A DNA stretch of 64,000 nt from IMGVR_UViG_3300027816_000051:186001-250000; one strand, 5' to 3'; positions 30,726-49,697 are shown, numbered from the stretch's first letter. Numbers and translations are program-made. The notes: a model not told the origin generated them from the letters alone.

Positions 30726-30740
30726 CTCTCCTTAAACCAA

Positions 30741-31887: not shown

Positions 31888-31908
31888 GTTGTTTTATTTT
31901 AGGCCAAA

Positions 31909-32298: not shown

Positions 32299-32316
32299 CT
32301 TGATTGGTTTATAATA

Positions 32317-32348: not shown

Positions 32349-32392
32349 TGTTTTTTTGCCAAACAAAAATCCCCCTGTGACGGGGGACCTTT

Positions 32393-32995: not shown

Positions 32996-33270
32996 TGTTA
33001 TGTTGTTTTATGATACAAATATAATACTGTTATTATTATATTCCAAATAATTTTTTATCTTTTTTATTGTTTTCTTGCCAACCAAGTTTTTGGATTAACC
33101 AGGGTCACCAGCAAAATGACCAGTAAAACTGGCTGTTGCAACCAGTCTGAAGCCAGGTGATTTTGGTTGGCACAACTTAAAGTGTTGATTTTATTAGGAT
33201 TACAGAATGCCAAACAAAATTCCGATGACCAGCATCATGCGCGCAACATCTTCAAGCAATAAAAAACCCC

Positions 33271-34041
33271 TCATTGTGAGGGGTCTACTATAAACTTACT
33301 ATCTTTTTGAGGTCGTTTTCGTGTGACTTTATATTTTAATCCCACAATAATGTCGTTCTCATCTCGATATCTCATATCATATAAGTCACCATCGATAACT
33401 TTTCTACCCCAAAACTTTTTGGGTATTTCTTTTTTGAAAACAACGGCAACTCGTATACCATTGTTCAACATACTAATACAATCTGAAAAGTTTGTACCAC
33501 TAAATGAAAATGTTAAGTCGTAGTTCTTATACTTCTTAACTAACTCCATTCGTTTACCCACTTTGCTGTAGTCGTAAAACATAACATTAGGAAACAATTG
33601 CAAAATGTTTTTTCTTTTACCATCTATCTCCATATGAAAAGATTCGGGTGAAATGTCTGAAGTGTTATTTAAACGAACACTAAAGTGATAACCTTGTTTT
33701 TCTGCCTTCTTTTTTGCCGCCTCAATTTCTGCAACCATCCATTGCATGAAATACTGGCGATGTTCGAAAAACAATTTTGTTTTTTTAATTCTACTCTCAG
33801 TAATCATGTCATCTCTCATGTTCATTCGATTCATACCAGATTCGTTTAAACATAGTGCAGTACACTCCGCGTTTCTCATTGGGCAAACTTCGTAACCACT
33901 TAAGTCCGCGGGTGCGAGGTAAAGACTGTAGGTTAATTCATCATACTTGTACGCCTTAGCGTGTTTTGATGTCAGGTTAACTGAACCTAAATAATTGATT
34001 CCAGTTTCCTTTCTGGCTTGGGTTTTATTTCTGTACTCCAT
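33271..34041 (-). CDS. Gp88-like phage protein
   Basis: LYLAP, CP..C...CL, RLNNTSDI, FYDYSK, NYDLTFSFS, DGDLYDMR. Confidence 0.75.
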   Translation of the reverse strand: MEYRNKTQARKETGINYLGSVNLTSKHAKAYKYDELTYSLYLAPADLSGYEVCPMRNAECTALCLNESGMNRMNMRDDMITESRIKKTKLFFEHRQYFMQWMVAEIEAAKKKAEKQGYHFSVRLNNTSDISPESFHMEIDGKRKNILQLFPNVMFYDYSKVGKRMELVKKYKNYDLTFSFSGTNFSDCISMLNNGIRVAVVFKKEIPKKFWGRKVIDGDLYDMRYRDENDIIVGLKYKVTRKRPQKDSKFIVDPSQ

Positions 34042-34272
34042 ATAATATTGGTTTAACAATACAAATATAAAACGAATTCTTTTATATTCCAAATTTATTT
34101 TTATTTTTTTTCTTCAGGAGGGACCTGTTCTTCCCAGGGCGATATTGTTTGGCGGGCGCCAAACTAATTTAATAGACGAACTGTGCAGCTCCTCCGCACA
34201 CATTCGAGCAATAAAAAACCCCCACATTTCTGTGAGGGTTTTTCGAACCGAACATTAAATCAATATACTAAA

Positions 34273-34650
34273 CTAAAGAACCCCTTCTATTGAATGTCCC
34301 TTTTTGGTGAGGTTTTTACCTTTACGTTCATAGTTGTTGTAGCCAACCAAAAACAAATCGTCTTTGGTCCCTAACACCATCGAACCTTCAAGTTTCATTC
34401 CACCATAAGTTACTTTCAGCTTACGCATAAAATCATTGAAAGAACGCTCAAGCTGTACACCAATCTTATCGGTAGGAGGAACTGGTGCATTTTCAATGTG
34501 ATAACGAGTACCAACACGAGAAAATTTAATTCCCACCATTTCCTTTTTCTCAAAGTTTGGTAAACTCTCATTAAGGCATTCACGAATTTCGTGCAAAGAC
34601 TTCTTCAGAGAATTAGCCGTAGTCTTTCTTGGTTTTTTTATCATATTCAA
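34273..34650 (-). CDS. Basic hypothetical protein
   Basis: Cassette with own promoter and terminator. Confidence 0.55.
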   Translation of the reverse strand: MNMIKKPRKTTANSLKKSLHEIRECLNESLPNFEKKEMVGIKFSRVGTRYHIENAPVPPTDKIGVQLERSFNDFMRKLKVTYGGMKLEGSMVLGTKDDLFLVGYNNYERKGKNLTKKGHSIEGVL

Positions 34651-34899
34651 GTTTTTGAATTACAGTACAAAAGTAATAAGAATATTTTCGATAAACAACA
34701 AATATTTTCACTTTGTTCAACTTTTTTGTCAAAACCTTATACAAAAAGTGTCTTTTTTATTGGATTACAAACATTTGTGTGTTGAAAACTCCGCCAAACA
34801 AAATCTGGAGTCGTCTTCAGGATGTTACATCTTGTGAAATTTTGAGCAAAAAAAAGGGGTAACCTTTCGGTCACCCCAATCACTAACCCTAATCCAAAG

Positions 34900-35655
34900 T
34901 TAGAAACGAAGGTTCAACTTGTCCTCATTACGACGCTTGTAGTTGTAAATGTCTTCAATCATTTCCGCGTATGATTTTTTATCACCACACATATAGATTG
35001 AACTTGGACGAAGTTTTACTTTATGTAAAAATTCTTCAAACTTAAAATCGGGTTTCTTTTCCATAATGGTAAGAATAGTACGAACAAATACCGATTTGTT
35101 GTAACCCTTTTCAAAGTAAGGTTTCAGTTGGAGTAGGTTATTCGCCCATTCTTTGGCGGTTTCCATATTACCAACAACAAACTTACCATCCGCAAAATCT
35201 TGTTTGTCACAATGACGAGTACCAGAATTTTGTAGTAACATAATTCTTTCGGTCAAAGAAAACATCGGAAACTCTTTTGAAAAATCTTCCAAAGTTTTGT
35301 AAGATTTGTTTCCTTGTTCGGAAAAACCATGAATGTAATCTTTCTTACCCCACTCTTTCATGTTCTGGTTGAACTTACGTGCGGCTTCAAAGATACCTTT
35401 CGTGGTGTTGGGGATTGAGTTGTCTACAATAAAGTAGATACCTTTACCCGCTTCTTTTGCTGCGGTTAGTCGGTGTTGTCCGTCTACAACCACATACTGG
35501 GAGTTTACAATGATTGGAACGAGTTTTAATCCGTCCTTCTTCATCGAGTCTGTAATACGCTTAACGCGTGGAGAGTCTACCTCACGATTTACATTGTGAA
35601 GTTTGAACATACCCAAATTTTGGGTGAACTTTACTTGAACATTTTTTGTACTCAT
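34900..35655 (-). CDS. ParB-N/Srx domain protein
   Basis: NREVD, PIIVN, VVDGQHRLTA. Confidence 0.8.
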   Translation of the reverse strand: MSTKNVQVKFTQNLGMFKLHNVNREVDSPRVKRITDSMKKDGLKLVPIIVNSQYVVVDGQHRLTAAKEAGKGIYFIVDNSIPNTTKGIFEAARKFNQNMKEWGKKDYIHGFSEQGNKSYKTLEDFSKEFPMFSLTERIMLLQNSGTRHCDKQDFADGKFVVGNMETAKEWANNLLQLKPYFEKGYNKSVFVRTILTIMEKKPDFKFEEFLHKVKLRPSSIYMCGDKKSYAEMIEDIYNYKRRNEDKLNLRF

Positions 35656-36028
35656 TTTCGTTTCTAATTTTAGATTAAAGATTTAATGTGGGTACAAAGA
35701 TATAATAGTTTTTCTTTTTTTCCAAATTTTTTTTAAAGTTTTTTCAAAAAAGTTTTTCCACATACATCTTTGACTTTGTGTATGACAAACATACTAAAAC
35801 TTTTAAGGATATTCACCAAGAATACTAGTATTTCTTGCCAAACAAAATCGTCCAGCCGTCGTCCAGTTTTCCCCCTGGCGTATGTTAAAACGAAGATTTT
35901 CAGTATTTTAGAAACAAAAAAAGGGATTCCGAAGAACCCCTTTAGTGTGTCAAACCAAACACAAATTACAACTATGAAATGTAATCCAATAAAAAGTTAC
36001 ACATCATATTTTACATTGTCAAGTGTTT

Positions 36029-37102
36029 TTAGATTACAGGTAATACATCAAGTTCTTTACCTTTTTCTTGGTAGAACAAACTTCCACCATCATTTCCCTC
36101 ATCATCCATAGAAGGAATACATAGTGTTCCGTTGTCCAACTCAATACAAATTGGTCTCTTGTACCAACCCATAAGTTCCATTTCCTCATCGGTAAGATAA
36201 CGAACTGATTTGATAACTCGTCCCTTTAGGACTTTCTCACTTTGATTTACCCAATGGGTAGTTATTTCTTGATTTGTCATACGAATGGTTTTTTACAAAG
36301 GTATAAAGATTATTTCTTTTTACAAGTTATTTTTGCCAATCAATATTCACTGTTCACCATGTCTTCGGGTATCTTTCCAAAATATCTTGGGGATAGAGAA
36401 CACCATTACCATTAAGTAATACATCCTCCCACCAACGAATACCAATTTGTAAACGGGGTACTGCGAATTTTGGAATGTCATCTTGATGGACTCTAAAGAA
36501 CACATCGTTTCTTCCACCCGTTTCAGGTTCGCCTGGTGTAGGTAGTGTTTCTACTTCCTCACAATATTTTGCACGAACACCGAATTCTTGTTTTAACCAC
36601 TTTTCGAATTCCTTAATGTTGGACTTACCGATAAGAGTTGCGGGCCAAACACAAACTTGACTGAAATTTTTCATGTTACAAATAATTTAATTGACAATAA
36701 TCCTCAAGGTCAACTAATGGTATGCGACCATATTTTACGGAAGAATAATACCCTTGAGTTTCGTACCCTTTCTTCCATTGTTCGAACGCCTTACACGCCG
36801 CTCTGTGCGACTTGTAGTAAGGTACATCCCTTTCGAGTGTGAACCCATCAGGGGATAAAATTTGAATTTTCTGTGCCATATGATTAACGATAAAGAGTTA
36901 CATAGTCACCGAAATACTTTTCAATCACGCCAATCAAATTCTCATAATCCCCACTCATCATCTCCTCTTGAATTTTCTTGGAGTCCAAACCGAGTTGTTT
37001 CGCCCATTTTGAGGCGAGACCAATAAGAACGAACGCGTTCCCATCAGGTCCTGTGAGGTCAATCTCAATACCTCCTTGTTTTTCATCAATAGATTTTATC
37101 AT
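36029..37102 (-). other. Four small hypothetical genes (36029-36280, 36354-36674, 36676-36879, 36884-37102)
   Basis: Co-oriented ORFs with promoters; motifs SMDDEGNDGG, GGRND and LTGPDGNAF. Confidence 0.6.
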
Positions 37103-37244
37103 TGTCTTGTCGTTTTATAATACAAATATAAATCAGTAATTAATATAATCCAAATATTTTTTTATTTTTCTTGCCAATCTAATTTCCGTCCTGAACCGTG
37201 ACTCAGAGTCCTGAGAAATAAAAAAACCCCTTTCGGGGTTTCTC

Positions 37245-37652
37245 TTACGAGGTGTACTTGTTATAGAACACTTCCATTCGTTCCATTACCACATCTAAAC
37301 TCCAACCACTTGTGTCTTGGTCGTTCCAATGAAAGTAACCCATTTGAAATTTCTCAACACAATTAGGTATTGATTTATCGTGTACGAACTCGGGGCAACC
37401 ACCATCAACAAAATCATCTTGGTAGTTACCACGATACTCAATTACGATATCCTTACCATTGAACTTTTTGGTGTAAGTTACTTTTTGAGTATACTTTTTG
37501 GTTTGAACTTTACCCTTTCGTGTCCAACCATGTTCGGACATAAAAACATCCATTTGTTGGTTAACACTTTCTTTTATCTTAGAAAGTTCATTCTCTTTTT
37601 CCTCTTTTTGTTTTTTCAAGAAGGAATAATAATCTTTAATTGTCGTGTACAT
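37245..37652 (-). CDS. Hypothetical protein
   Basis: Cassette with promoter and terminator (aaacccc-tttc-ggggttt). Confidence 0.6.
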   Translation of the reverse strand: MYTTIKDYYSFLKKQKEEKENELSKIKESVNQQMDVFMSEHGWTRKGKVQTKKYTQKVTYTKKFNGKDIVIEYRGNYQDDFVDGGCPEFVHDKSIPNCVEKFQMGYFHWNDQDTSGWSLDVVMERMEVFYNKYTS

Positions 37653-37977
37653 ATGTTTATTAATTTAACACCACAAATATAAAAGTATATAGAATATAAT
37701 CCAATAATTTTTTTATTTTTTTTGCCAAACAATTTGGTGGATTCCAGGTCCCCGCAGCAGGAAACCAGTAAAACCAGAAGCAATGACTAGAAAAAACCAG
37801 TTGTGCAACAGCAGCAACCAGCCCTTGATTTTGGTTGGCGAACCCAAACCATTGATTTTATTGGGTTTACAGAATGCCAAACAAAATCACGAACAGCAGC
37901 GCAACCAGCAGCAACTTCGGAGCAATAAAAAACCCCCACCTTTTGAGTGAGGGTTTTAACCAATAAAAATGAAACAA

Positions 37978-38667
37978 CTAACTCTCTGCGACCAATAGTT
38001 TTCGGTATTCTTTTTCGGTCAAGTGTCTAACCGAACCACTTTCACACTTCTTTTTCTTCTTAATAAGAACACAATCACCTTGCCGAACAATTTTCTCAAT
38101 TCCACCTTCTTTAATGTCTGTTTGAATTGTCCACGCGATTGCTTGAATAGGGGTAATCTTTTCACCAAAGTTCTCACTACTACTCAACCATTTGTCTTTG
38201 TTGTTAGTACGATAAACACTTTGTGCGTCCACCCAAATAAAATACTCCCTATCAGTTGAGGTGTCCTTACACTTTACAAAGTGAACATTATCTGGTCTAC
38301 GCCAACCAAATTCTGCACCTTCACCCCAAACATTTCCTTTTACTTCATAAAGTTCGTAGGTGTCCTCAAAGTTTTTCTTAATGAGTTCACCATTCTCACC
38401 AACCCAAAATGTTTCTTTTGAAATCGTTTCGGACTTAATAAGTGTGGGGTTCACTTCTTTGTAAATGTTTTCCAAACCCAAACAACCTACGGCGATACGC
38501 CTCTGTTCAATGTTTTGAATTTCGGTTGTAATTTCTTTGAAAGTAATAGGAACAATATCTTCCCAAATATCTTCCAAACCATTAAAGGGTGTATTACGAT
38601 ATTTTGTTTTTAATAAACGACAACCAATGTTGTAGTCAAAACGAGTGTTTTCAATTATGATTTTCAT
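37978..38667 (-). CDS. DUF6745-like protein
   Basis: NIEQRR, YELY, VKCKDTSTDREY, AIAWT. Confidence 0.5.
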   Translation of the reverse strand: MKIIIENTRFDYNIGCRLLKTKYRNTPFNGLEDIWEDIVPITFKEITTEIQNIEQRRIAVGCLGLENIYKEVNPTLIKSETISKETFWVGENGELIKKNFEDTYELYEVKGNVWGEGAEFGWRRPDNVHFVKCKDTSTDREYFIWVDAQSVYRTNNKDKWLSSSENFGEKITPIQAIAWTIQTDIKEGGIEKIVRQGDCVLIKKKKKCESGSVRHLTEKEYRKLLVAES

Positions 38668-38687
38668 TTCTTTTACTTTTTAATTGT

Positions 38688-39341
38688 TTACATATCACTT
38701 TCAGTCAATACCAAAAATTGTCTTGTTAGTGAAACGAATAATGTGTTATCTACAATTTTAGGTAATACATCACTATCCACTTCTTCTGTGTTGAATTGAA
38801 ACCAATCCTCTTGTTCGCCGTCTGCGTTTTCAAATTCGTGGTTCTCAACAACATCAGTAATCTTTTCCAATAATGTATCAGAAATCTGTTCTTCCTCATC
38901 ATTGAGAATACAATCACCTTTGTAGTTAATTGAACTTCCGTCTTGACTGCCAACCAAATTAAGGACTTTGGTTCTAATAAACTCAACCTCTTTTTCTGTG
39001 AGTTCAACAACAACTTCTTCTGTAAAACTCTCTGACCATTCCGCCTGTGCAGATTTGTAATACGAGAAAGTGGGGTTTTCCTCATCATCTTCATCAAGTG
39101 TAATCTCAACACTTCCAAATTCACCAATGTAGTGTCCGTCAGAGTTCACATAAAATTCTACTCTACGGAAAACATCATCATCAAAGAAACTATCAAGTTC
39201 ACCACTCTCAACATCTTTGTTTTCTGAATTGTAAAAATTAAAGTGATAATCATTCATACTATCACCACCACAACTAAATTCCATAGTTGCGCTTGTAATA
39301 CCTAACTCTTTCCAGAGTGCGATTGCTTCATTAGTTTGCAT
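38688..39341 (-). CDS. Acidic protein, DUF6878-like
   Basis: GITSATMEFSCGGDS N-terminus. Confidence 0.5.
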   Translation of the reverse strand: MQTNEAIALWKELGITSATMEFSCGGDSMNDYHFNFYNSENKDVESGELDSFFDDDVFRRVEFYVNSDGHYIGEFGSVEITLDEDDEENPTFSYYKSAQAEWSESFTEEVVVELTEKEVEFIRTKVLNLVGSQDGSSINYKGDCILNDEEEQISDTLLEKITDVVENHEFENADGEQEDWFQFNTEEVDSDVLPKIVDNTLFVSLTRQFLVLTESDM

Positions 39342-39735
39342 ATTCGTGGATTTTTTGGTTTAATTGTTTAACTACTTCGTACGCTTCGGGGTTGTCTAAA
39401 TCTTTTACCCCATTACACATCCAGGGTTGAACCTCTAAATGTTTAAGGTAATCTTGTGGGGTTGGAACGAACTTCATTCTAAAATCTTCTGCGATATGTA
39501 ACATCGCAATATCAACAACATCAACTGACTTACCATCACTATTAGTAATGTTGTAACCGAAGATTTTTGGAATGATAGTGTATGCGAACCAAGTGTTGTG
39601 GGTGAGTAACCGAGAACTATTATTGTTCATTGTCGCTTTCGGACTATCAATAAGTTCGTGGATAGGTAAATAATCTTCTACCTTACCACCCCAACGCTTG
39701 ACGCTGCTCTTTGAGTGAATTAGTGGGTTCGCCAT
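39331..39735 (-). CDS. DUF6915-like protein
   Basis: MANPLIHSKSSVKRWGGKVEDYLPIH..DS, HIAED, VPTPQD. Confidence 0.65.
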   Translation of the reverse strand: MANPLIHSKSSVKRWGGKVEDYLPIHELIDSPKATMNNNSSRLLTHNTWFAYTIIPKIFGYNITNSDGKSVDVVDIAMLHIAEDFRMKFVPTPQDYLKHLEVQPWMCNGVKDLDNPEAYEVVKQLNQKIHEYAN

Positions 39736-39737
39736 AG

Positions 39738-40016
39738 TTAATCCCAAATTTGAGTGATAGTACCTTCAAACGGATTGTACTCAACTTGTTTTCCCATAAC
39801 CCAATCACCTTGCTCAACTTTGAGTGGTTTGTGTTCGTTTGAGAAACTTCCATCGGGTTGTTCGTGTCTTAATACACTATCCTTTCTAACTTCAACTTCT
39901 GCGAAATCTGTTTGTGTTTCATCAACAATGAAATCACCATACAGAGTGTGCTGGTTAACACCCTCACCCTTTAAGAGTGTGTGTTTTTTCTTCGGAGTTA
40001 CTTTCTTGTTTTTCAT
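39738..40016 (-). CDS. Small His-containing conserved protein
   Basis: GEGVNQH, LRHE, EH, QVEYNP. Confidence 0.55.
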   Translation of the reverse strand: MKNKKVTPKKKHTLLKGEGVNQHTLYGDFIVDETQTDFAEVEVRKDSVLRHEQPDGSFSNEHKPLKVEQGDWVMGKQVEYNPFEGTITQIWD

Positions 40017-40776
40017 TTTTAGATTGTTTTATGGTACAAATATAAATCTATTTTTTGTATAAGTGAATTTTTTTTTTATTTTTTTCGCCAAACAAAAATC
40101 ACCCGTGAAGGTGATTTCGTCATTCGTTTCGTACAATATCTAATAGGTCATTCACAATTTCTTTTTTGGTTAATGAAAGAAGTTGATTACCTCTGAACGA
40201 CAACAACTTAAAGGTATTCATTCCTTTAATACCTTTTTCACCCTCTACATAGTAATCCATTTTCCACTTACCCAAATACTTAACATTCCCTATGTGTTTT
40301 ACATAGTAGACATTACCGATAGTTAGTTTTTCTAAAACCATATAAATTAATTTAGAACACAAATATAAATCTATATTTTGTATAATCCAAATTTATTTTT
40401 ATATTTCTTGCCAAACAAAAGTTATCCTGTGCTGCATCATCACCATCTTGGATACTTATTATTATGATAGAAGGGATACTTTATACATTAGGAGTTGAGT
40501 TCGTATTAGTCATTATATTGTTTTGTTATGAGTTAAGAAGACAACTAAAAGAAGATTATCAAGAGAAACCATTTAGATTCTGGGAAGATACATGAACATC
40601 TCCTGGTTGCGCGCAGCCCTCGATTTTGGTTGGCTCGAACCCAAAGTATTGATTTTATTGGGTTTAGAGTTTGCCAAACAATTTTCACTGTTTGCGCGTA
40701 GCTCACCATCAACTTTGGAGCAATAAAAAACCCCACATTTCTGTGGGGTTCTTATTAATTGAGTACCTAACCAATC

Positions 40777-41631: not shown

Positions 41632-42035
41632 ATGGATGTTTTTTAATTTGATACAAATGTAATACACTTTTCATTATAATCCAAATAAATCTTTATTTTT
41701 TTTTTCTGACCCCAGAATTCACCGTACCATCTCAGAAATTGGTTGGCATCTGTCATACACCCGCCAAACTAAATTGAACACGGGATTTGCCGGCGACGAA
41801 TTTTTTTAGCAAACAAAAAACCCCCACATTTCTGTGAGGGTTCCTTAACCAAATAAAACTAATCTATGAACGACAAATCAAGTGTATTACACTTTAACCA
41901 AATATAGGAATTAAAACAAACATTGTCAATAGGAAAAACATAAGTATTACAATGCCACCCAAAATTCCATCCCAAAATTCCTTTCGGTCTTCTTGGTAAA
42001 CTTCTTTGAAAGTTGAAAACATTTCCTTTAACATA

Positions 42036-42395
42036 TCAATAATTGTTTTGATTATCGTAGTTGTCTCGGTAAACTCTTTTACGAGGTTGGTTGGTTCGTT
42101 GACCATTCCAATGGCGGTCTCCATTACCACCATTTTCGTAGTATGAGTTATTAATCATTTCATCAACCGATGGAACTTCAAAGTCCATATCACAACTTCC
42201 ATTCATCATCTTCCACTGAATTTCATAAATGGTTTTAATGTCTTCTTCAACATTGACATATGTACCATCTATGTATTCAATCTTCGTTGCTATCTTGTCG
42301 TTTCTTTTATCCAAGATACTAAAAATGTTTTTGACATTTTGTAGATTGACAAGTGTTGGGGTTCCTTTACCTTGATAAGTGAGTTTAATTAACAT
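42036..42395 (-). CDS. Hypothetical protein
   Basis: Own promoter; LVN..TKIEY..VNVEE pattern. Confidence 0.55.
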   Translation of the reverse strand: MLIKLTYQGKGTPTLVNLQNVKNIFSILDKRNDKIATKIEYIDGTYVNVEEDIKTIYEIQWKMMNGSCDMDFEVPSVDEMINNSYYENGGNGDRHWNGQRTNQPRKRVYRDNYDNQNNY

Positions 42396-42488
42396 TTTTT
42401 GTTTTTTTAATTATTGGACAAATATACAAATGAATTTTTGGAATATACAAACGATTGTGCCAATCAAAATCGGCGGTTCACCATCTCC

Positions 42489-42734
42489 TCAGATATTTCC
42501 CGAAAAGACAAGAAAATTGTTGGGTGGTAAATAAGTGTCGGGAGTGTCAATGATTTCATATTCATCTTCACCCTCAACTACACCAAGAGTCCTACCACTA
42601 TCCCAACGGACATTGATAACACCATGACCAACATGATAAATTGTTCCCATTGAACCTTCCTCAACGGGGTTAGGGTCGTTCTCCATTGAAACGAGACGAA
42701 TTCTTTTTCCGATTAATTTTTCGTTTATTTTCAT
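42489..42734 (-). CDS. DUF4314 family protein
   Basis: RIRLVSMENDPNPVEEGSMGTI..VRWDSGRTLG. Confidence 0.75.
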   Translation of the reverse strand: MKINEKLIGKRIRLVSMENDPNPVEEGSMGTIYHVGHGVINVRWDSGRTLGVVEGEDEYEIIDTPDTYLPPNNFLVFSGNI

Positions 42735-42809
42735 ATCTGTATTAGTTTATTAATACAAATATACAACTTATTTTATGATATCCAAATTTTTTTTAGGATA
42801 TTTTGCCAA

Positions 42810-43115
42810 TCAAATTGATGTCAATCTGAATATTCGTTTGAACTCTTTTTCAATTCTTCTGAATCTTATTTCGTCTTTTTCTCTAACATAACGCGATATT
42901 GTTTTGTTAAATTGAAAGTTAGAACGAGTAAGAAGATAGATAAATTTTCTCCTCTCCACTTTGTGACCTTCAAAGTTGTATGCCCATTCAACATCAACCG
43001 AAATATAATTTTCAGTTTCAATGATGTCACACACTTTACCTTCTTTTTCCGATTTTTTTAGGTAGTTCATTACTTCCTCATCGGTATTCAATGATATGTC
43101 GTTATAGTTTTTCAT
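42810..43115 (-). CDS. Hypothetical protein (probably leaderless)
   Basis: ATG 4 nt after TATATTTG; TGA stop inside the motif at 42805. Confidence 0.6.
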   Translation of the reverse strand: MKNYNDISLNTDEEVMNYLKKSEKEGKVCDIIETENYISVDVEWAYNFEGHKVERRKFIYLLTRSNFQFNKTISRYVREKDEIRFRRIEKEFKRIFRLTSI

Positions 43116-43350
43116 AATACAAATATACAATTCATTTTATGATATCCAAATTTATTTTAAAATATCCAATAACACCATCTACTGTTTCACCCGGCGTCGT
43201 AAAAATTTTGGTTGGCTGACCACATAAAACACTTAAATATAATAGGTTATCCGCCAAACAAAATCCCCACCAGGCGTGGGCTGGGCGAATTCTGGTATAA
43301 AAAAAAATCCCCGACTTTCGCCGAGGACTTTTCACCTAACCAAACAAAAT

Positions 43351-43758
43351 CTATTCGTATTCTTCTGCGTACAATTCACCCGTGAGGTACATGTCGTAAG
43401 TTTTTACTTCACCCTCCAACACTTCGGTTACTTTGTCAATAAGACTTTGGGTAATTTTCTTTACTCCATATTCTTCACGGACTTTCTTCTTTGAAACAAA
43501 GTACCAACCAACTTGTCCACTATCCCAACGACAACTGAACGGACTTGTGTTCATTGTAATTCCCGAGTGGTCGTACAAGTAAAGAGGTAAGATAACACAA
43601 ACATCTTCTTCTTTGATGATTGCGTTTTTCATTTCTTCCCAACCATTGTAGTTATTGTGGTTGTAGTCGTGTTTGTCTCCAAGGTCGTAACGTCCGTGAA
43701 AACACACCATTTTTCCGAGGTTGTCCCAACTCCGTGGGTTGTCAAAATCTTGATACAT
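43351..43758 (-). CDS. Conserved phage hypothetical protein
   Basis: PRSWDNLG, LPLYLYDHSGIT, WDSGQVG, YLTGE. Confidence 0.7.
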   Translation of the reverse strand: MYQDFDNPRSWDNLGKMVCFHGRYDLGDKHDYNHNNYNGWEEMKNAIIKEEDVCVILPLYLYDHSGITMNTSPFSCRWDSGQVGWYFVSKKKVREEYGVKKITQSLIDKVTEVLEGEVKTYDMYLTGELYAEEYE

Positions 43759-44367
43759 AGTCGTTATTATTTATTGGTTTATACAAATATATAACAATTT
43801 TATTCGTTTACCAAATCTTTTTTGCCAAACTTTATTCGTCTGTACGCCTTCGCCGAAGGTTTCGACTTCTGTAACATTTTCCTACGGACTATTTGTGCGA
43901 CGTGTCTCACACTTAATCCATTAAGGGTTTCATTCTTCATAGTTAAATTCGGTTTCATCTTCTATTTCTTTAAGTTTTTGTTCAAACTCATTTCTCATTT
44001 CATCGGTATCAAAGATTGGTTGTTTAGTTTCATCATCAATGTAATAGTAAACACCGACTTTGATTTCCGTTGGGATTGATTTCTTACTCATAGTAATTAT
44101 GTATTACGATACAAATATAAAACTATATTCAGTATAATCCAAATTTTTTTTCATACCTGTCGTCTCCATCCCACAAATTGTTTGGCGTGTTGTTTAATGT
44201 TTTGACCGAAAGATTAAACAAAACATATAGTGTAATACGCCTTTATTGAGTGTCATACAGTGCCAACCAAATTTAGGATACAGCACGTGCTGTGAGGTGA
44301 AACTAAAACGCAACAAAAAAGGGTAACATTTCTGCTACCCTTTTCCACCGCAACCGAGTTAAACCAA

Positions 44368-44916
44368 TTAAATCGACAAGTACAGGCGGTTGTGGTTGTA
44401 TAGTGCGACTGGGTTTTCTTCCGCAATCTTACCATATTCCTTTTTAATGATTTCGTACATTCTATCTTGTGGTTCGTTAATACACTCCGATAAAAGTTCA
44501 CAAAAACCATAGTTACTTTCATCAACTACTTCTTGTTCGGTACCAGGTAAACCACAATAGTACGCTTCCCCTACTTCGGAAATAAACATTCCCGAATAAA
44601 AACCTTTCAACTTAAAGTGATTAACGAATTTGTCCGCGTTACACCAAATAAAAATTGAATTGTCTTTTTCTTTTAATAGGTACACCATACTTTCATCAAT
44701 GATGAAACCATTTGAACCAGGAAATTGTCCAACCGAGAACAATCCCATAGGTGCTCCGTGTCCACACATTATTACTCTGTCGTGGGCGTCGATAAGTTTT
44801 CTAACTTCTTCTTTTGTTACCCCACCCGTGATAATTGTCTTATTCGGTATAGGTTCGTACACAATATCTAAAAATTGTGTCGATTTGTCTTTTGGATGAA
44901 TTACAAGTGTTTTCAT
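44368..44916 (-). CDS. Hypothetical protein with possible His-Cys peptidase dyad
   Basis: VIMCGHG and IFIWCNA. Confidence 0.5.
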   Translation of the reverse strand: MKTLVIHPKDKSTQFLDIVYEPIPNKTIITGGVTKEEVRKLIDAHDRVIMCGHGAPMGLFSVGQFPGSNGFIIDESMVYLLKEKDNSIFIWCNADKFVNHFKLKGFYSGMFISEVGEAYYCGLPGTEQEVVDESNYGFCELLSECINEPQDRMYEIIKKEYGKIAEENPVALYNHNRLYLSI

Positions 44917-45552
44917 TATTTTGTCGATTTTATGATACAAAGATATAACGAGTTTTTTATTCTACCAAATTTATTTTTATTTTTCTTGCCAACTAACCAA
45001 ATAGTAACTTACCATTCGGTAACATCTCAGAACCGCTGCGTCGGGAAAATTTTGGTTGGCGTTCTTACAATCTGTAAAGTAAAAACCTACTAATCTGTAA
45101 AGTGGATGCCAAACAATTTTCACCCTGAACCGTGACTCAGGACTTCAGGTCATAAAAAAACCCCAACTTTCGTTGAGGTCTTGTCTTTACTCTTCTTCAC
45201 TATCCCGAAAAATTTGAATCGCTTCGTTGAACAATTCATTCTGTAATTGAAATAGTGTATATCCACTCTTAATACATTCATCTACCCAATCATTATCACC
45301 TTCAAAAATTCCTTCCCAACTTCTATTCGGTGGTAAACCCATTTCGTTTTCGGTTTGAATATGTTGGTAAATTAAACCAACAACTTCTTGTCTTGTCATT
45401 TTAATTAGTTTTGGTGAAACACAAAGATAAAACATTTTTTCGTATAATCCAAATTTTTTTATATCTTTCTTGCCAACCAATTTTCACCCTGAACCGTGAC
45501 TCAAGTTCTTCAGGTCATAAAAAAACCCCCACCTTTCGGTGAGGGTTCGTTG

Positions 45553-45855
45553 TTAAAAAACTTCGGGTTCAAACTCAATTTGTGGGATACCCAATAGTTC
45601 GTAATCATCAAATTCCCCCCAATCGGGTTCATTGAAATAACGAAAACGGACATCCATAGTTCCATCTTCGTTCCACCAAATACGGACTTGGGTTCGGTGG
45701 TCGGAAATAAAAAACCCTTCAAGTTGTTCCAACTTCTCAATTAGAGGTTGAACATCCGAATCGTCAATAGTTACTTCTTCGTTATTAACGAGGAAATCAT
45801 CAACACATTCACAATTACCATCGTAGTCGATAGAGAAATCAATGTACTTTTCCAT
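45553..45855 (-). CDS. Acidic hypothetical protein
   Basis: Cassette with promoter and terminator. Confidence 0.6.
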   Translation of the reverse strand: MEKYIDFSIDYDGNCECVDDFLVNNEEVTIDDSDVQPLIEKLEQLEGFFISDHRTQVRIWWNEDGTMDVRFRYFNEPDWGEFDDYELLGIPQIEFEPEVF

Positions 45856-46144
45856 TTTGTTTTTTTTGTTTTATTGGTTTAACAATACAAATATAAATCA
45901 AATTTTAATATACACAACATTTGAGTATATTTTTTTTTATCTATTTTGCCAAACTACCACGAAACAGATGACCACCTGTCGTCAAATCCGAAAAATTGTT
46001 TGGCGTAGGTGTAATACAATGTATGATAGTGTCATACAACGCCAACCAAAATTCCGAGCTGCAACTGTGCAGCTCCACTGCACACATCCGAGCAAAAAAA
46101 ATCCCCGACTTTCGCCGAGGACTTTCCACCTAACTAAACCAAAC

Positions 46145-46519
46145 CTAATATGAACCAAACCTTTCTTTTAACGCCACGTCAAACGCGGACATAAATGTTA
46201 CTTGTTCTTTGACTTCTTCAAGTGAAAGTTTGGTATCACCATTTTCACCCGTTTCATCATCGTAACCCATTATCAACCCATTACCCGATAGAGGTTGTCG
46301 GTAATTTTTCAACTTGAAAAACTTTGTGTTTTCATCAACACTCATTATACCTTCTTCATCAACATACACATCGTTTTCGTTGTTGTAACTAACAATCTCA
46401 AAAATAGAACACTTTAAGTGTCCATAGATACTTGGTAACTGACTACCAGTTTCATCACGAACAACTTCAACTTCGGAAATTGTTTTGTTTTCTACGTCGA
46501 TTAAAATTCCTCTTGACAT
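46145..46519 (-). CDS. DUF3846-like protein
   Basis: DVYVDEEG, PLSGNGLIMG. Confidence 0.6.
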   Translation of the reverse strand: MSRGILIDVENKTISEVEVVRDETGSQLPSIYGHLKCSIFEIVSYNNENDVYVDEEGIMSVDENTKFFKLKNYRQPLSGNGLIMGYDDETGENGDTKLSLEEVKEQVTFMSAFDVALKERFGSY

Positions 46520-46614
46520 TTCTTTTTTGTTTTATTGGTTTAACGATACAAATATAATACTATTTCTTTTATATTCCAAATCTTTTTTTGCCAATCAAAT
46601 TCCAACATCTCCCG

Positions 46615-47980
46615 TCAGGAGGTCAGGTATTTCTTGTCTTTGACAAATTTGAGGTGTCTACATTCCTCAATAGTCAATCCCACAAATTCGTTGGGAGTGA
46701 AACTGATTTCATCGGGATAGTAGTCGAACAAAAATTCTTCTTGTCCATTTTCCATTGTAACCCACACTTGGGGCATCGGGTCGAACAAACTCTTTGGTTG
46801 TTCCGTAATACGAGATGAGATAACTTTCATGATTTTGTCTATTGGTTTAACTATACAAATATAAAACTATTTTTCTTATATACCAAATTTATTTTTATTT
46901 TTCTCAGAACCGTCGTCCGTATCCAAAAATTGGTTGGCGTAGGTGTAATACGATACTCACTATTTGTCATACGGCGCCAAACAATTTTCCTTCAGGGCCC
47001 TGACTCAAGTCCTGAAATGTTCACCTTATCAATAAGGGAAACAAATAAAAAACCCCCACCATTACTGATGAGGGTTAGTCTGAACCAACAAACTAAATTC
47101 AATTTAAACAAAGATTTTTCATAAGGTCGGAAACTTGGTAAGGTTTATAAAAATCAAAAACCTCTTGATGTTTTTCATCGGTTACAAAATTGTGGAACTC
47201 AACATTCAAAACGCCCTTGTCAAAGGTTGTTTCAACACTACACAAAATTTCGTGTCCATCCCTTTCAATGATTTGTGGAACAACTCGGTCGTACACCATT
47301 CTACCGATTGGGTCGTTTGGTACTGGTCCACCACCAACACCATACTCGGTTTCCCCTTCTTCGTTTACTTTTTTCAAAAGGTACATTTTTACATTGGGTA
47401 CACTATCGTTTGTTCCCAACATTTCTTCGGTACTCACTTTTGCGGAGTGTGTCATTCCTTGAATAAAATCTCTGATTTCTTCAATGTCTTTGTAATTGTT
47501 CATACTTGTTCTTTTTATTTGGTTTAACAATACGAATATAATATGATTAAACGGATATTCCAAATAAATTTATATTTTTTTTGCCAACTTACGATACAAG
47601 ATGTCGAGGGACAGAAGACGGATTTTGATTTTTGGTTGGCGAGCGTAATACGATAATACCAATGTGTAATACCCCGCCAAACAATTTTCTACGCTGCTCA
47701 AATCCACCACAGAACCTCGTGTAAATAAAAAACCCCCAACTTTCGTTGAGGGTTAATTACCATTTTGGAATTTTTAGAACCTTTGAGGTTGTGGTTTCTT
47801 TTTACTCTTGATGTAATTTTTGATGTCCTCAAACAAAATGATAAAGAACATACCAATACCCATACAAGAAAATAAGAACATACCCATTTGATTGTCTACG
47901 GGAATATCCCAAGTTAATGATACCCACATTGAGTAAACAATGAACCCGATGATTGCGATGTAAGGAAATAACTTTTTCAT
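46615..47980 (-). other. Three single-gene cassettes (46615-46830, 47099-47503, 47774-47980; the last is a two-TM protein)
   Basis: Each has its own -33/-7 promoter. Confidence 0.6.
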
Positions 47981-48078
47981 AATTGTTTCTTTTGTTTGGT
48001 TTAACGATACAAATATAATATAAGTTTCAATATAAACAACATTTTTTTATATCTATTTTGCCAACTTGATAACACCAA

Positions 48079-48276
48079 CAACTTCTCCTTCGAGCAACAG
48101 CGCATGGTTGGAAATTAGATTGGCGGTTTTAGCAACACCTAAAGCATTTAGCAACTTCTCCTTCGAGCAATTGCGCATGAGGGAAATTAGATTGGCGGTT
48201 TTAGCAACACCTAAAGCATTTAGCAACTTCTCCTTCGAGCAATTGCGCATGAGGGAAATTAGATTGGCGGTTTTAG
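48079..48276. repeat. 72-bp tandem repeat, about 2.7 copies
   Basis: Unit caacttctccttcgagcaattgcgcatgagggaaattagattggcggttttagcaacacctaaagcatttag starts at 48079 (variant), 48152 and 48224. Confidence 0.95.
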
Positions 48277-48479
48277 TCCGTGTCGGCGCATTTGCAACAA
48301 ACTCGCCAAACAATATCTAACAGCGCAGCCCGGGTGAAATTCTGTTCCCAAATTTTTTCTTACTTTTTTTATTCGTTCCCGCCAAACAACATTCCCGATG
48401 GTTCACGGGGTTCGGAAAATTTCACACACAAAAAAAGGGGATACTTTCGTACCCCCTTCGGTTTTTCTTTCGGTGTGTG

Positions 48480-49043
48480 TTACTCCTTTACAATTTCGTA
48501 CCTATCTCCGTTTACCGAAATTTCAAGTACATTGTCAAGGTCGGGTGTTATCGGTTTAACCTCTCTATCCAAACCTTGTTTTTCGTTACTACTCTTTCTA
48601 TCACTTATCCACTTTTCAAACAATGTTTTGTCTATTGAGTTACCACGAAATTCGTACTCCGTTGTTCCTTTGATTTCGGGAAACCACTCTACCATAAGGT
48701 AGGTTTTTGTTTCGGTGTCGGTGTCAGTCAGTAATGATTTACTGATATGTTTTTTACCCGTTGGACTTTCAACCTTAAAGGTGTTCGGGTCTTTACCCTC
48801 TTTCATAAGGTTGTTGTGTACCCTCTTTTCGTAGTCAGTTACCAAACGATAAGTTTTAGATGATACCTTAAAGATTTCCTTATAGTAAGGGTTTAATTCT
48901 TTGGTGTCCTTTGTCTTTTGTAAAACTTCTTTGTAAAGGGTTTTCATTTTTACCCCTACAAAAGTGTTAGGACTTTTTTCCTCAATCTCTTTGATGATAC
49001 TGATGATTTCGGACTTCGTTACTTTTTTGATTTCTTTGTTCAT
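48480..49043 (-). CDS. Hypothetical protein
   Basis: Cassette with promoter and terminator; NPY, DYEKRV motifs. Confidence 0.65.
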   Translation of the reverse strand: MNKEIKKVTKSEIISIIKEIEEKSPNTFVGVKMKTLYKEVLQKTKDTKELNPYYKEIFKVSSKTYRLVTDYEKRVHNNLMKEGKDPNTFKVESPTGKKHISKSLLTDTDTETKTYLMVEWFPEIKGTTEYEFRGNSIDKTLFEKWISDRKSSNEKQGLDREVKPITPDLDNVLEISVNGDRYEIVKE

Positions 49044-49304
49044 ACTTTTATTTTTTAGTTTGTTAGGAATACACAAATATAAAACACTATTTCATATAAA
49101 CAAAACTTTTTTTTATTTATTTCGCCAGACTACCACGAACCCGATGACCACCTGTCGTCCGTATCCGAAAATTGGTTGGCGAGTCGGTGCAATTATGGTC
49201 TATTCGCCAATCAAATTTCCACCTGAACCATCTCCTCAAGTTCACACAAATCTTCTTGGACAAAAAAAATCCCCACCTTTCGGTGAGGACTTTCGGTGTG
49301 GTGT

Positions 49305-49562
49305 TTAATCTTCTTCACCCTCTTCAATTCCCGACATTACAACTTCGGTCAAGTGATTAACAAAGGTTTCGTACAACTTGTAATCCAACATAACCTTTTG
49401 TCTTGTGTGTACAAGGGTTACGTTCTTTTCGTTTTTTTCATCGTACAACTCATTTGTTAGGTCATTCGTGAAATCAGTACCATTCCACTCGTAGTCAATT
49501 TGGTTTGACAATAACTGGTCAATTTTACTTTTAACCAAGTTTTTAACTTTTTGTGTGTCCAT
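49305..49562 (-). CDS. Hypothetical protein (first gene of the - strand block)
   Basis: TATCTTTG upstream, terminator downstream. Confidence 0.6.
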   Translation of the reverse strand: MDTQKVKNLVKSKIDQLLSNQIDYEWNGTDFTNDLTNELYDEKNEKNVTLVHTRQKVMLDYKLYETFVNHLTEVVMSGIEEGEED

Positions 49563-49697
49563 ATTTTTATTAATTGGTTTGTGGGTACAAAGATATAACA
49601 ATTTTAAAATAATACAAGTGAAAGTTATTCACATCCTGAATGTGGATTTTGACCACCCTGAACCTGACGACCCCCATCCCACAAATTGTTTGGCATA

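What the first reader, a model, noticed from the sequence alone, without database searches (positions are those of the whole stretch)
33160..49217. Back-to-back inverted motif pairs enclosing a second repeated motif
Seen: about 12 intergenic units read TTG(G/T)TTGGC-loop-GCCAA(A/C/T)C. The two arms are usually non-identical (GGTTGGC versus GTTTGGC), and the polarity is swapped at 44186/44262 and 46004/46041. Loops fall into classes. (a) TTGATTTTATT(A/G)G core near 33185, 37852, 40649. (b) Direct repeats of (T/C)GT(A/C)ATAC spaced 20-21 bp: 44231/44251, 46010/46030, 46944/46965, 47644/47665. (c) AATCTGTAAAGT twice, 23 bp apart (45069/45092). (d) Very short loops (34153/34158, 41747/41763). Inference: composite nucleoprotein sites for two factors, or cruciform/ssDNA hairpins reminiscent of attC-type recombination substrates.
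Basis: partly seen in the sequence, partly recalled or inferred. Interest (0 to 1): 0.75.

Follow-up and report, generated by a model that had tools for sequence, protein, structure and literature searches.

The report
Phage gene-island operator-like repeat sites
The inverted motif pairs are real, conserved DNA words lying between the terminator and promoter of nearly every small gene in an accessory-gene island of an uncultivated 288-kb phage; they look like binding sites for phage-encoded regulators, not recombination hairpins.

Summary
TTGKTTGGC occurs 40 times in the window against 1.1 expected. All 40 lie at 24.7-49.7 kb, a minus-strand island of about 46 small genes in a 288-kb IMG/VR jumbo phage.

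Read in gene direction, each spacer runs: intrinsic terminator, arm, loop, inverted arm, often a further arm, A-tract, then a Bacteroidetes-type promoter (TTTG...TAnnTTTG).

- Arms are as conserved as the promoter boxes (0.92 against 0.52 for loops).
- Promoter-proximal arms sit 7-9, 17-20 or 28-31 nt from the -33 box, never between.
- Arm pairs are complementary no more often than chance.
- ssDNA folds are weak, and no tyrosine, serine or Y1 recombinase is encoded.
- Related phages keep the architecture and the inner word GTATKAC, but each lineage has its own arm word.
- A ParB/KorB/Noc-fold protein encoded in the island (34900-35655) occurs in 17 of 17 loci with TGGC-type arms and in none of 10 others.
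- Single-gene cassettes come and go between relatives, with breakpoints in the repeated spacers.

Best reading: composite double-stranded operator or insulator sites for a lineage-specific factor plus a conserved second factor. Cassette shuffling of the T4 PeSL kind is a by-product. The attC/cruciform reading is not supported. Binding itself is untested.

The parts
24185..49700 (-). Accessory-gene island: about 46 small genes, all on the minus strand, most with their own promoter and terminator. It holds all 40 exact motif copies of the window.
   Evidence: protein families
33163..33217 (.). Paired unit, loop class a (AATAAAATCAA core; matches WATCAANNNNTTR)
34145..34166 (.). Tight unit: near-perfect 18-bp palindrome GTTTGGCG-CC-CGCCAAAC. 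It sits in the same relative position after the ParB-like gene and its neighbour in this phage, L134, L135 and L136.
37831..37884 (.). Paired unit, loop class a
40626..40681 (.). Paired unit, loop class a
41739..41772 (.). Short paired unit with one GTATGACA. In orthologous units of relatives the loop is 15-76 nt long, but the arms and GTATKACA are kept.
43208..43261 (.). Paired unit
44178..44270 (.). Paired unit, long loop with two GTATKACA 20 bp apart; arm variants swapped
45052..45116 (.). Paired unit, loop with AATCTGTAAAGT twice
45996..46049 (.). Paired unit, two GTATKACA; arm variants swapped; best ssDNA fold of the set (z -6.7)
46930..46984 (.). Paired unit, two GTATKACA 21 bp apart
47632..47684 (.). 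Paired unit, two GTATTAC 21 bp apart. A natural variant (contig 3300008116_000055) lacks 68 bp: the left flank, the gene-direction arm and the loop. The other arm remains.
49172..49217 (.). Paired unit (TTGATTGGC ... GCCAACCAA in gene direction)
46590..46598 (-). Promoter-proximal single arm, 9 nt upstream of the -33 TTTG
45472..45480 (-). Promoter-proximal single arm, 18 nt from -33; also the edge of a cassette missing in L133 and L134
42805..42813 (-). Promoter-proximal single arm, 18 nt from -33; contains the upstream gene's TGA stop
42459..42467 (-). Promoter-proximal single arm, 7 nt from -33
40410..40418 (-). Promoter-proximal single arm, 18 nt from -33
40087..40095 (-). Single arm fused to a terminator T-run; edge of a cassette missing in L133 and L134
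37724..37732 (-). Promoter-proximal single arm, 19 nt from -33
37173..37181 (-). Promoter-proximal single arm (TAGATTGGC), 18 nt from -33
33077..33085 (-). Promoter-proximal single arm, 29 nt from -33
32358..32366 (-). Promoter-proximal single arm, 9 nt from -33, fused to a terminator T-run
31405..31413 (-). Promoter-proximal single arm, 18 nt from -33; its TAG is the upstream gene's stop codon
30260..30268 (-). Promoter-proximal single arm, 18 nt from -33; its TAG is the upstream gene's stop codon
27587..27595 (-). Promoter-proximal single arm (TAGATTGGC), 18 nt from -33
34900..35655 (-). ParB/KorB/Noc-fold protein (251 aa, DGQHR motif): candidate binder of the arms
47731..47754 (-). Example of the intrinsic terminators that precede the units in gene direction. 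Others: 47051-47076, 45523-45548, 44309-44352, 37929-37957, 34856-34877, 33264-33286.
   Evidence: 28 found against 11.8 expected
48079..48276 (+). 72-bp tandem repeat, 2.7 copies, each carrying TAGATTGGC; copy number differs in a near-identical phage

Best explanation
The arms (core ATT-TWGNTTGGC) are double-stranded DNA recognition sites for a sequence-specific, phage-encoded protein. The inner word GTATKAC(A) is the site of a second factor that is conserved across the phage family. Three loops instead carry an IHF-like consensus. Together they form composite operator or insulator sites in the untranscribed gap between the terminator of one small gene and the host-type promoter of the next. 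They occur throughout a roughly 25-kb accessory (probably early, anti-defence-type) gene island.

Single arms placed whole helical turns upstream of the -33 box would let the bound protein touch RNA polymerase or a polymerase-bound partner. The inverted pairs further upstream would be the stronger, dimer-type nucleation sites. In this lineage the most likely arm binder is the orphan ParB/KorB/Noc-fold protein encoded in the island at 34900-35655. It would act like KorB with KorA on plasmid RK2, with proximal and distal operators and a second factor.

Because the same spacer is repeated about 30 times, homologous recombination between spacers also adds and removes single-gene cassettes.

Shown: motif enrichment, position, conservation, phasing, lineage switching, cassette mosaicism, and the fold and distribution of the ParB-like protein. 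Inferred: that any protein binds, which one, and whether the effect is activation, repression or insulation.
For: Enrichment and confinement to one island.

Fixed place in the spacer (terminator, arm, loop, arm, arm, A-tract, promoter).

Host-type promoters are concentrated here: 24 of 53 in the genome. Of those 24, 14 have TTGGC within 45 nt upstream, against 0 of 29 elsewhere.

Proximal arm to -33 distances in this phage and five relatives are 7-9 (13 cases), 17-20 (43) and 28-31 (13), with none at 10-16 or 21-27. An unrelated arm word in L168 shows 12, 23 and 35.

Conservation against L134: arms 0.92, -33 box 0.95, -7 box 0.94, coding sequence 0.84, other spacer 0.76, loops 0.52.

Orthologous units keep the arms and GTATKACA while loop length varies from 15 to 76 nt.

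Each lineage has its own arm word, while GTATKAC is kept at 14-38 copies per locus.

Relatives carry tight 22-bp palindromic versions, TTGTNTGGC-N3/4-GCCANACAA.

The ParB-like family is the only one of 347 gene families that splits loci exactly by arm type. Neither a sequence search nor a profile search finds it in five whole contigs of other-arm lineages; the positive control is. Lineages with and without it interleave in three gene trees.

The AF2 model has pLDDT 89. Its best PDB matches are ParB, Noc, KorB and Spo0J across both the N-terminal and DNA-binding domains.

KorB operators lie 4-10 bp or 45 to more than 1000 bp upstream of promoters and work with a second operator, OA (PMC11790492).
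Against: Lineages without the ParB-like gene have the same architecture with other arm words. So the ParB-like protein cannot be the universal binder, and its perfect association could be shared ancestry plus cassette exchange.

The protein has DGQHR rather than the canonical GERRxR CTP motif, and Pfam sees no helix-turn-helix in it.

Most copies are half-sites or split palindromes, unlike parS, OB or NBS sites.

Fixed spacing could partly reflect common descent of duplicated promoter cassettes.

GTATKAC is also enriched inside coding sequence on the gene strand, which a simple operator model does not explain.

The RNA data were too sparse to show that the units are untranscribed.
Confidence: 0.6

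Rival explanations
1. The units are attC-like or cruciform recombination substrates. They would fold as single-stranded hairpins and be cut and joined by a site-specific recombinase to move gene cassettes.
For: The cassette-like gene array has inverted repeats with variable centres, and single-gene cassettes are present or absent between relatives. The arm words differ between lineages on both arms at once.
Against: No tyrosine or serine recombinase is found, and only a sub-threshold Y1 hit (15 bits), in a 92%-complete genome. About two thirds of copies are single arms. Variable arm positions are not compensated: 12 of 71 against 18.4 expected, and 0 of about 22 tight palindromes are perfect. 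Folds are weak with large open loops. Cassette breakpoints show 50-70 bp of overlapping homology that includes the promoter, which is the signature of homologous rather than site-specific exchange. Each cassette has its own promoter and terminator. The polarity is the reverse of attC core sites.
Confidence: 0.04
2. The arms are selfish or neutral repeats of the REP/BIME or MITE kind, or just the best-conserved remnant of a duplicated ancestral spacer. They would spread with cassette duplication and have no dedicated regulatory role.
For: Inverted pairs with discrete linker classes, three of them with an IHF consensus, resemble BIME/RIP elements. The arms carry an extended degenerate flank of about 35 nt, typical of duplicated sequence. 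Spacers are clearly paralogous. Recombination between them is seen.
Against: Arms are conserved like the promoter boxes while the sequence around them decays. Arm spacing to the promoter is quantised in helical turns, and different lineages favour 18, 19 or 29. The arm word is kept even where it overlaps stop codons and C-terminal codons. A whole lineage replaces the word at 40-60 sites at once, which needs selection by a reader. No RAYT scores above cut-off.
Confidence: 0.13
3. The units act at the RNA level, as 3'-UTR stabilising hairpins, back-up terminators or small RNAs made by read-through.
For: A-run before and T-run after many pairs resemble a bidirectional terminator. Two contigs from RNA libraries cross units: 44191-44437 and 45992-46083. 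ssDNA fold z-scores are mostly around -2 to -3.
Against: The units lie downstream of strong intrinsic terminators and upstream of the next promoter. Single arms cannot fold. There is no compensation at variable positions. No Rfam family matches at E up to 0.1. RNA libraries may contain DNA, and coverage was sparse. Phasing to the -33 box is a DNA property.
Confidence: 0.08
4. The arms are protein-binding sites, but the reader is a host factor or an unidentified phage protein encoded elsewhere. The ParB-like gene would be only a passenger anti-defence gene.
For: Lineages lacking the ParB-like gene keep the architecture with other words. The island is full of anti-defence-type passengers: DUF932, DUF4314 and SprT-like here, and SAM lyase, C5 methylase and RadC in relatives. 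ParB-like nuclease-domain proteins are common in such islands (background knowledge).
Against: The 17/17 against 0/10 association holds across interleaved lineages. The fold spans a DNA-binding domain. The tight palindrome lies next to the gene in the same relative position in four lineages.
Confidence: 0.3

Closest known systems
PeSL (promoter-early stem-loop) regulatory cassettes of T4-like phages (PMC2839356, PMC4122927)
   Same: Repeated composite terminator-plus-host-promoter spacers with an A/T-rich upstream tract. They are concentrated in a hyperplastic region of small ORFan genes. Insertions and deletions between relatives have breakpoints in the repeats.
   Different: PeSLs are defined by promoter and stem-loop only. 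Here there are two extra conserved words (arm and GTATKAC), inverted pairs, helical phasing, and lineage-specific rewriting of the arm. The promoter is Bacteroidetes-type. Mini-circles were not tested.
KorB-OB / KorA-OA global silencing network of plasmid RK2 (PMC11790492)
   Same: A ParB-fold DNA-binding protein is encoded on the element. Many operator copies are spread over one regulon, either just upstream of the promoter or tens to hundreds of bp away. A second factor has its own operator.
   Different: OB is a perfect 13-16 bp palindrome, whereas most sites here are half-sites or split, deliberately imperfect palindromes. No ParA partner, no KorA homologue and no canonical GERRxR motif were found. 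Binding is untested.
Stoperators of Cluster A mycobacteriophages (PMC6550527, PMC9283540)
   Same: A short asymmetric word is present in dozens of intergenic copies, mostly in one orientation relative to transcription. Its consensus differs between related phages.
   Different: Stoperators are spread genome-wide in temperate phages and are read by a known monomeric immunity repressor. Here the sites are confined to one island of a phage with no integrase, are often in inverted pairs, and enclose a second word.
BIME / RIP elements (REP pairs with an IHF-binding linker) of enterobacteria
   Same: Alternating-orientation repeats with non-identical arm types and discrete linker classes, lying after gene ends. 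One linker class carries an IHF consensus.
   Different: Single arms here are not themselves palindromic. No RAYT is present. The elements are in a phage rather than a chromosome, and the arms are phased to promoters.
Integron attC sites
   Same: Imperfect inverted repeats with variable centres lie between cassettes.
   Different: There is no integrase, the core polarity is reversed, the cassettes carry promoters, many arms are single, and pairing is not selected.
P1 parS (ParB boxes flanking an IHF site)
   Same: In the three class-a units, two inverted protein-box arms flank a central IHF-consensus site, and a ParB-fold protein is encoded nearby.
   Different: There are dozens of sites instead of one centromere, no ParA, and no HU/IHF gene in the phage. 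A host IHF-like protein is only assumed.

Membership tests
Integron attC / cassette array | Integron-type tyrosine recombinase (IntI) encoded with the array | tested here: not met
   PF00589 gives no match in the 288-kb, 92%-complete genome, and the control rings in 14 of 14 genomes. PF00239 also gives none.
Integron attC / cassette array | Core sites R'' RYYYAAC ... R' GTTRRRY, with AAC/GTT towards the centre | tested here: not met
   The arms read TTGKTTGGC ... GCCAAMCAA on both strands, so GTT is outer and GGC/GCC inner, the opposite polarity (read directly from the sequence).
Integron attC / cassette array | Conserved single-strand fold kept by compensating changes; promoterless cassettes | tested here: not met
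   12 of 71 pairs are fully complementary against 18.4 expected. Folds are weak. Each cassette has its own promoter and terminator.
REP/BIME | REP-associated Y1 transposase (RAYT) | tested here: not met
   PF01797 gives only a 15.3-bit hit, below the 23-bit cut-off.
REP/BIME | Inverted repeat pairs of two arm types joined by a few linker classes, one with an IHF site | tested here: met
   Arm variants T and G alternate between the two arms. There are four loop classes. Three loops match WATCAANNNNTTR.
REP/BIME | Each repeat unit is itself an imperfect palindrome of about 35 nt | tested here: not met
   The conserved arm is a 9-13 nt non-palindromic word. GC-rich mini-hairpins occur in only some flanks.
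PeSL regulatory cassettes | Host-sigma early-type promoter with an A/T-rich upstream tract, plus a stem-loop terminator in one intergenic repeat | tested here: met
   24 TTTG-N17-21-TAnnTTTG promoters lie in the island. A-tracts are seen upstream. Terminators number 28 against 11.8 expected.
PeSL regulatory cassettes | Located in a hyperplastic region of ORFans; insertions and deletions between relatives break in the repeats | tested here: met
   Gene content is mosaic. Window stretches 45178-45472, 42810-43103, 40087-40358 and 37178-37672 are absent from L133 and L134, with 50-70 bp of overlapping flank.
PeSL regulatory cassettes | Excised mini-circles | not testable with these tools
   Only assembled contigs of RNA libraries could be laid. 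They show rearranged relatives but no circles.
ParB/KorB-type operator network | Element-encoded protein with a ParB N-terminal domain plus a helical DNA-binding domain | tested here: met
   phrog_12305 at E 6e-22. AF2 model with pLDDT 89. Foldseek top hits are ParB, Noc, KorB and Spo0J over 215-269 columns at E 1e-4 to 1e-3, though TM is only 0.3-0.4.
ParB/KorB-type operator network | 13-16 bp palindromic site bound by a dimer | tested here: inconclusive
   This phage has one near-perfect 18-bp palindrome at 34145-34166. Tight N3-4 palindromes dominate in L171, L174, L162, L173 and L167. Most sites in this phage are half-sites or split by 15-75 bp.
ParB/KorB-type operator network | Operators proximal (4-10 bp) or distal (45 bp or more) upstream of the regulated promoters | tested here: met
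   Proximal arms lie at 7-9, 17-20 and 28-31 nt, and pairs at 55-190 nt, compared with PMC11790492.
ParB/KorB-type operator network | CTP binding (GERRxR box) and specific binding to the site | not testable with these tools
   The protein has DGQHR at residues 58-62. Complex prediction did not fold the protein-DNA job.
Stoperators | Asymmetric short site in many intergenic copies, mostly in one orientation relative to transcription, with a consensus that differs between related phages | tested here: met
   31 co-oriented against 14 reverse copies. All single proximal arms are co-oriented. The arm words are lineage-specific.
Stoperators | Cognate immunity repressor of a temperate phage | tested here: not met
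   No integrase is present. No Cro/CI-type protein was found among the island proteins scanned.

The most novel reading that the evidence does not exclude
A family of freshwater jumbo phages, probably infecting Bacteroidota, runs its anti-defence or accessory gene island with a two-word operator code. A universal inner word (GTATKAC) would be read by a conserved factor. An outer 9-bp arm word has been rewritten wholesale, at 40-60 sites at a time, in each lineage, so it co-diversifies with a lineage-specific reader. That would be a phage counterpart of KorAB global silencing. The arm word would act as a specificity label, for example keeping co-infecting relatives from controlling each other's islands.
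Probability: 0.25. Interest if true: 0.75.

Novelty: new variant of a known kind. Interest (0 to 1): 0.6.

Why it matters
Accessory (anti-defence) gene islands of large phages are where new genes arrive and leave, yet how they are regulated as a block is almost unknown for uncultivated phages and for Bacteroidota phages generally.

This locus offers a readable regulatory grammar: terminator, paired arms around a second word, a phased arm, then the promoter. It is shared by at least 20 lineages, with a natural experiment in which the arm word was swapped many times.

If the ParB-fold protein reads the arms, ParB/KorB-type silencing would extend from plasmids to lytic jumbo phages, and to half-site and split-site recognition.

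The same repeats explain mechanically how single-gene cassettes are shuffled. That is useful when annotating and comparing metagenomic phage genomes.

Tried and rejected
- A whole-collection scan for GTTTGGC-N25-55-GCCAACCAA returned mostly single chance matches. It was useful only because a few loci turned out to be near-identical phages. The 400-kb record G005 has only dispersed chance hits.
- Megablast of the region against the phage collection found no match.
- Recombinase searches: no tyrosine or serine recombinase, and only a sub-threshold Y1 transposase hit.
- HU/IHF: none is encoded. The IHF consensus is not enriched across the window, at 13 against 11 expected, so the three loop matches are only a hint.
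- Sigma70_r4_2: none found. A sigma70_r2 gene exists at genome position 142.7 kb, but no fixed -10-like partner follows the arms, so an alternative-sigma promoter reading was dropped.
- E. coli-type promoters are not enriched, at 61 against 57.
- Rfam: no match at E up to 0.1.
- RNA-library contigs from four runs were too sparse to define transcript ends.
- Complex prediction (ParB-like dimer plus the 31-bp palindrome) was not folded by the tool and is not evidence either way.
- A PDB sequence search with the ParB-like protein found nothing.
- A search for a replacement DNA-binding protein in lineages lacking the ParB-like gene found only a methylase, a SAM lyase, a RadC-like protein and ORFans.
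- A literature search for the motif strings returned only primers.

Full report
**What is there**

The window is bases 186,001-250,000 of a 288,260-bp IMG/VR virus record, estimated 92% complete. TTGKTTGGC occurs 40 times in the window against 1.09 expected by shuffling. The whole genome has 45 copies, and 40 of them fall in window 24.7-49.7 kb.

That stretch has higher G+C than its flanks (0.35-0.39 against 0.31-0.33) and reversed skew. It consists of about 46 small genes, all on the minus strand. The field of motifs is larger than reported, and about two thirds of the copies are single arms.

**Anatomy in gene direction (minus strand)**

Printing every spacer as reverse complement shows one recurring order:
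1. stop codon;
2. GC-rich hairpin with a T-run;
3. 20-60 nt that are relatively G+C-rich;
4. A/T run plus arm TTGKTTGGC;
5. loop of 4-75 nt;
6. inverted arm GCCAAMCAA;
7. 30-190 nt, often with a further arm in gene direction;
8. phased A-tracts;
9. TTTG, about 19 nt, then TAnnTTTG;
10. the gene.

TTTG/TAnnTTTG is the -33/-7 promoter type of Bacteroidetes (background knowledge), so the host is probably a member of the Bacteroidota. Of 53 such promoters in the genome, 24 lie on the minus strand of this island. Fourteen of those have TTGGC within 45 nt upstream, against none of the 29 elsewhere. Intrinsic-terminator-like sites are enriched (28 against 11.8), and the strong ones sit just upstream of the units. 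E. coli-type promoters are not enriched.

The relaxed arm is ATT-TWGNTTGGC. In tightly packed junctions its TAG or TGA serves as the stop codon of the upstream gene, and the ATT before it is kept even as a codon.

**What the island encodes**

Family hits are GP88, DUF932, DUF4314, DUF6915, SprT-like, L5 gp82-like, an Api92-like domain, bPH_2 and a ParB-like protein. Most genes have no hit. Relatives add a SAM lyase, a C5 methylase and a RadC-like protein at the same locus. This is the make-up of an accessory, anti-defence-type island. The genome also encodes a sigma-70-family protein elsewhere. That fits an island driven by host polymerase and other genes under phage control, which is an inference.

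**DNA site or folded strand?**

As single-stranded DNA, the twelve units fold at only -5 to -14 kcal/mol, with z-scores from -0.6 to -6.7. The energy comes from the arms, and most loops stay open. No Rfam family matches.

Across seven lineages, 12 of 71 arm pairs are fully complementary where 18.4 would be expected if arms were drawn independently. In this phage the figure is 0 of 13 against 3.2 expected (P about 0.01). None of about 22 tight palindromes in relatives is perfect. So pairing at the variable positions is not selected and may be avoided.

Single arms cannot fold at all. The genome encodes no tyrosine or serine recombinase, and no Y1 transposase above cut-off. The arm polarity is the reverse of attC core sites. 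These results rule out membership of the attC and REP/BIME families and make a hairpin mechanism unlikely.

**Signs of a protein reader**

- Conservation. Against the relative L134, arms are 0.92 identical and the -33 and -7 boxes 0.95 and 0.94. Coding sequence is 0.84, other spacer 0.76 and loops 0.52. The same ranking holds for four other relatives.
- Phasing. In this phage and five relatives, the distance from the last base of a proximal arm to the -33 TTTG is 7-9 nt (13 cases), 17-20 (43) or 28-31 (13). It is never 10-16 or 21-27. Lineages differ in which turn they prefer: 18 here, 29 in L135, 19 in L137. L168, with a quite different arm word, shows 12, 23 and 35.
- Orthologous units. Upstream of the DUF932 gene the arms and an adjacent GTATKACA are kept, while the loop varies from 15 to 76 nt.
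- A second conserved word. GTATKAC is about 20-fold enriched on the gene strand of the island. It usually follows the gene-direction arm by 0-4 nt, and a second copy lies 20-21 bp on.
- IHF-like sites. The three class-a loops carry WATCAANNNNTTR with an A-tract. The core survives in L134 even though the small internal hairpin does not.

**Relatives: one architecture, many arm words**

Near-identical phages recur in several freshwater metagenomes. Using the DUF932 protein, and then an alignment of it, I fetched about 60 distinct related loci, many from contigs of 170-330 kb.

Lineages with DUF932 identity of 54% or more keep the spacer architecture and GTATKAC (14-38 copies per locus, gene-strand biased). 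The arm word differs between them:
- TTGTTTGGC or TTGWTTGGC in this phage and eight others;
- ATGTTTGGCT, TTGTCTGGC, TTGTGTGGC, TTCTGTGGC, ATGACTGGC, TTGTTTCGC and TTCTTTGGC in seven more lineages;
- unrelated words in others: TTGCCCCAC (22 forward, 19 reverse), TTAGTCTGG, TTTACTGGG (35/28), TTTACTGGA, TTTACCGGG and TTTGTCTAG.

In several lineages the commonest unit is a tight 22-bp palindrome with a 3-4 bp centre, which is classical dimer-operator geometry. Both arms, and dozens of sites, change together between lineages. That is what a co-evolving reader predicts, and it parallels the stoperators of mycobacteriophages (PMC6550527).

**A candidate reader**

After clustering all ORFs of 24 loci into 347 families, only one family splits the loci exactly by arm type. 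This is the ParB-like protein of window 34900-35655. It is present in all 17 loci with TGGC/TCGC-type arms and in none of the others.

Sequence and profile searches of five whole contigs of other-arm lineages, one of them 97% complete, find no homologue. The profile finds one copy in each genome of the first kind that was searched. Lineages with and without the gene interleave in the trees of three different island genes. For example, L170 and L172 are sisters at 98/97 support, and L152 and L153 sit inside this phage's own clade.

A 16-sequence alignment gave an AF2 model with mean pLDDT 89. Its best PDB matches are ParB, Noc, KorB, Spo0J and pNOB8 ParB across both the N-terminal and DNA-binding domains. 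TM-scores are low (0.3-0.4), as expected when domain orientation differs. The tight palindromic unit lies in the same relative position, after this gene and its neighbour, in this phage, L134, L135 and L136.

KorB of RK2 is the closest functional model. It is a ParB-fold repressor with operators 4-10 bp or 45 to more than 1000 bp upstream of promoters, and it acts with a second operator-binding protein (PMC11790492).

Several caveats apply. Lineages lacking this gene must use another reader. The association may be inflated by shared ancestry. The protein has DGQHR rather than GERRxR. Binding could not be modelled.

**Cassette turnover**

Synteny comparisons show that whole single-gene cassettes are present or absent between relatives. 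Window stretches 45178-45472, 42810-43103, 40087-40358 and 37178-37672 are missing in L133 and L134. The two flanks overlap by 50-70 bp of repeated arm-plus-promoter sequence, the mark of homologous exchange between spacers.

Gene content across lineages is a mosaic. Contigs from four RNA libraries show further rearranged relatives, and one loses homology exactly at the outer edge of an arm. One natural variant has lost 68 bp comprising an arm and its loop. This matches the PeSL model of T4-like phages (PMC2839356; PMC4122927). I regard it as a consequence of the repeated regulatory spacers, not the purpose of the arms.

**Verdict**

The feature is real, strongly non-random and conserved. The best-supported mechanism is a set of composite double-stranded binding sites for two factors that control or insulate the promoters of an accessory-gene island. 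I put confidence in that general reading at about 0.6, and about 0.3 that the ParB-like protein is the arm reader. The attC/cruciform reading fails its defining tests. I class the feature as a new variant of known kinds (PeSL, KorB operators, stoperators). Its unusual traits are lineage-wide rewriting of the arm word, split and deliberately imperfect palindromes, and a universal inner word.

Noticed in passing
window 49690-49990 (minus strand); also L136:2601-3922 and L139:442-1458: A conserved non-coding head region lies between the island and the divergently transcribed gene at 49993. It has long G-runs (GGGGGGATACGGGAGGGAGGGGGG...) and repeated palindromic TTTCTGGAAATTTCCGGAAA-like words, and it is recognisably conserved even in the lineage with a different arm word. 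It could be an origin, a packaging signal or a control region.
   Followed up: partly
window 48079-48276: A 72-bp tandem repeat (2.7 copies, 96% matches) overlaps the start of the small gene 48053-48250. Each copy carries TAGATTGGC on the + strand. A near-identical phage (contig 3300008114_000020) differs by one repeat unit.
   Followed up: partly
window 24149-47666, gene strand: GTATKAC is enriched about 20-fold on the gene strand, not only in the loops but also inside coding sequences of the island. There are 31 hits in genome positions 210-240 kb against about 0.5 per 10 kb elsewhere. TGTATTACA is a 9-bp palindrome except for its centre base. A polar signal or internal sites remain unexplained.
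   Followed up: partly
genome G000:C1:142709-142915 and 40895-41080 (outside the window): The phage encodes a sigma-70-family protein (region 2 hit, 65.9 bits, 276-aa frame) and a second weak candidate. This suggests a phage-directed later transcription programme, distinct from the host-type promoters of the island.
   Followed up: no
window 47642-47709 compared with L147:3899-4071: A natural 68-bp deletion variant removes the left flank, one arm and the loop of the 47.6-kb unit but keeps the other arm. The right breakpoint lies one base from the retained arm.
   Followed up: yes
window 45069-45103; L139:20183: The loop word AATCTGTAAAGT (class c) also appears in the distant lineage L139. It is also in a contig from an RNA library (run X19) that matches only these 35 bases, with unrelated sequence on both sides.
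   Followed up: no
L152:16540-17427, L152:8980-9408, L172:11138-11608: The same island in relatives carries a C5 cytosine methylase, a RadC-like JAB protein and a SAM lyase. This supports an anti-defence role for the island as a whole.
   Followed up: partly
window 25010-25180: Four arms in gene direction (three TAGTTTGGC, one TTGTTTGGC) are spaced 47-57 bp apart in one 271-bp spacer at the downstream end of the island. They resemble the multi-arm arrays (about 50-58 bp spacing) seen in the TTTACTGGG lineage.
   Followed up: no
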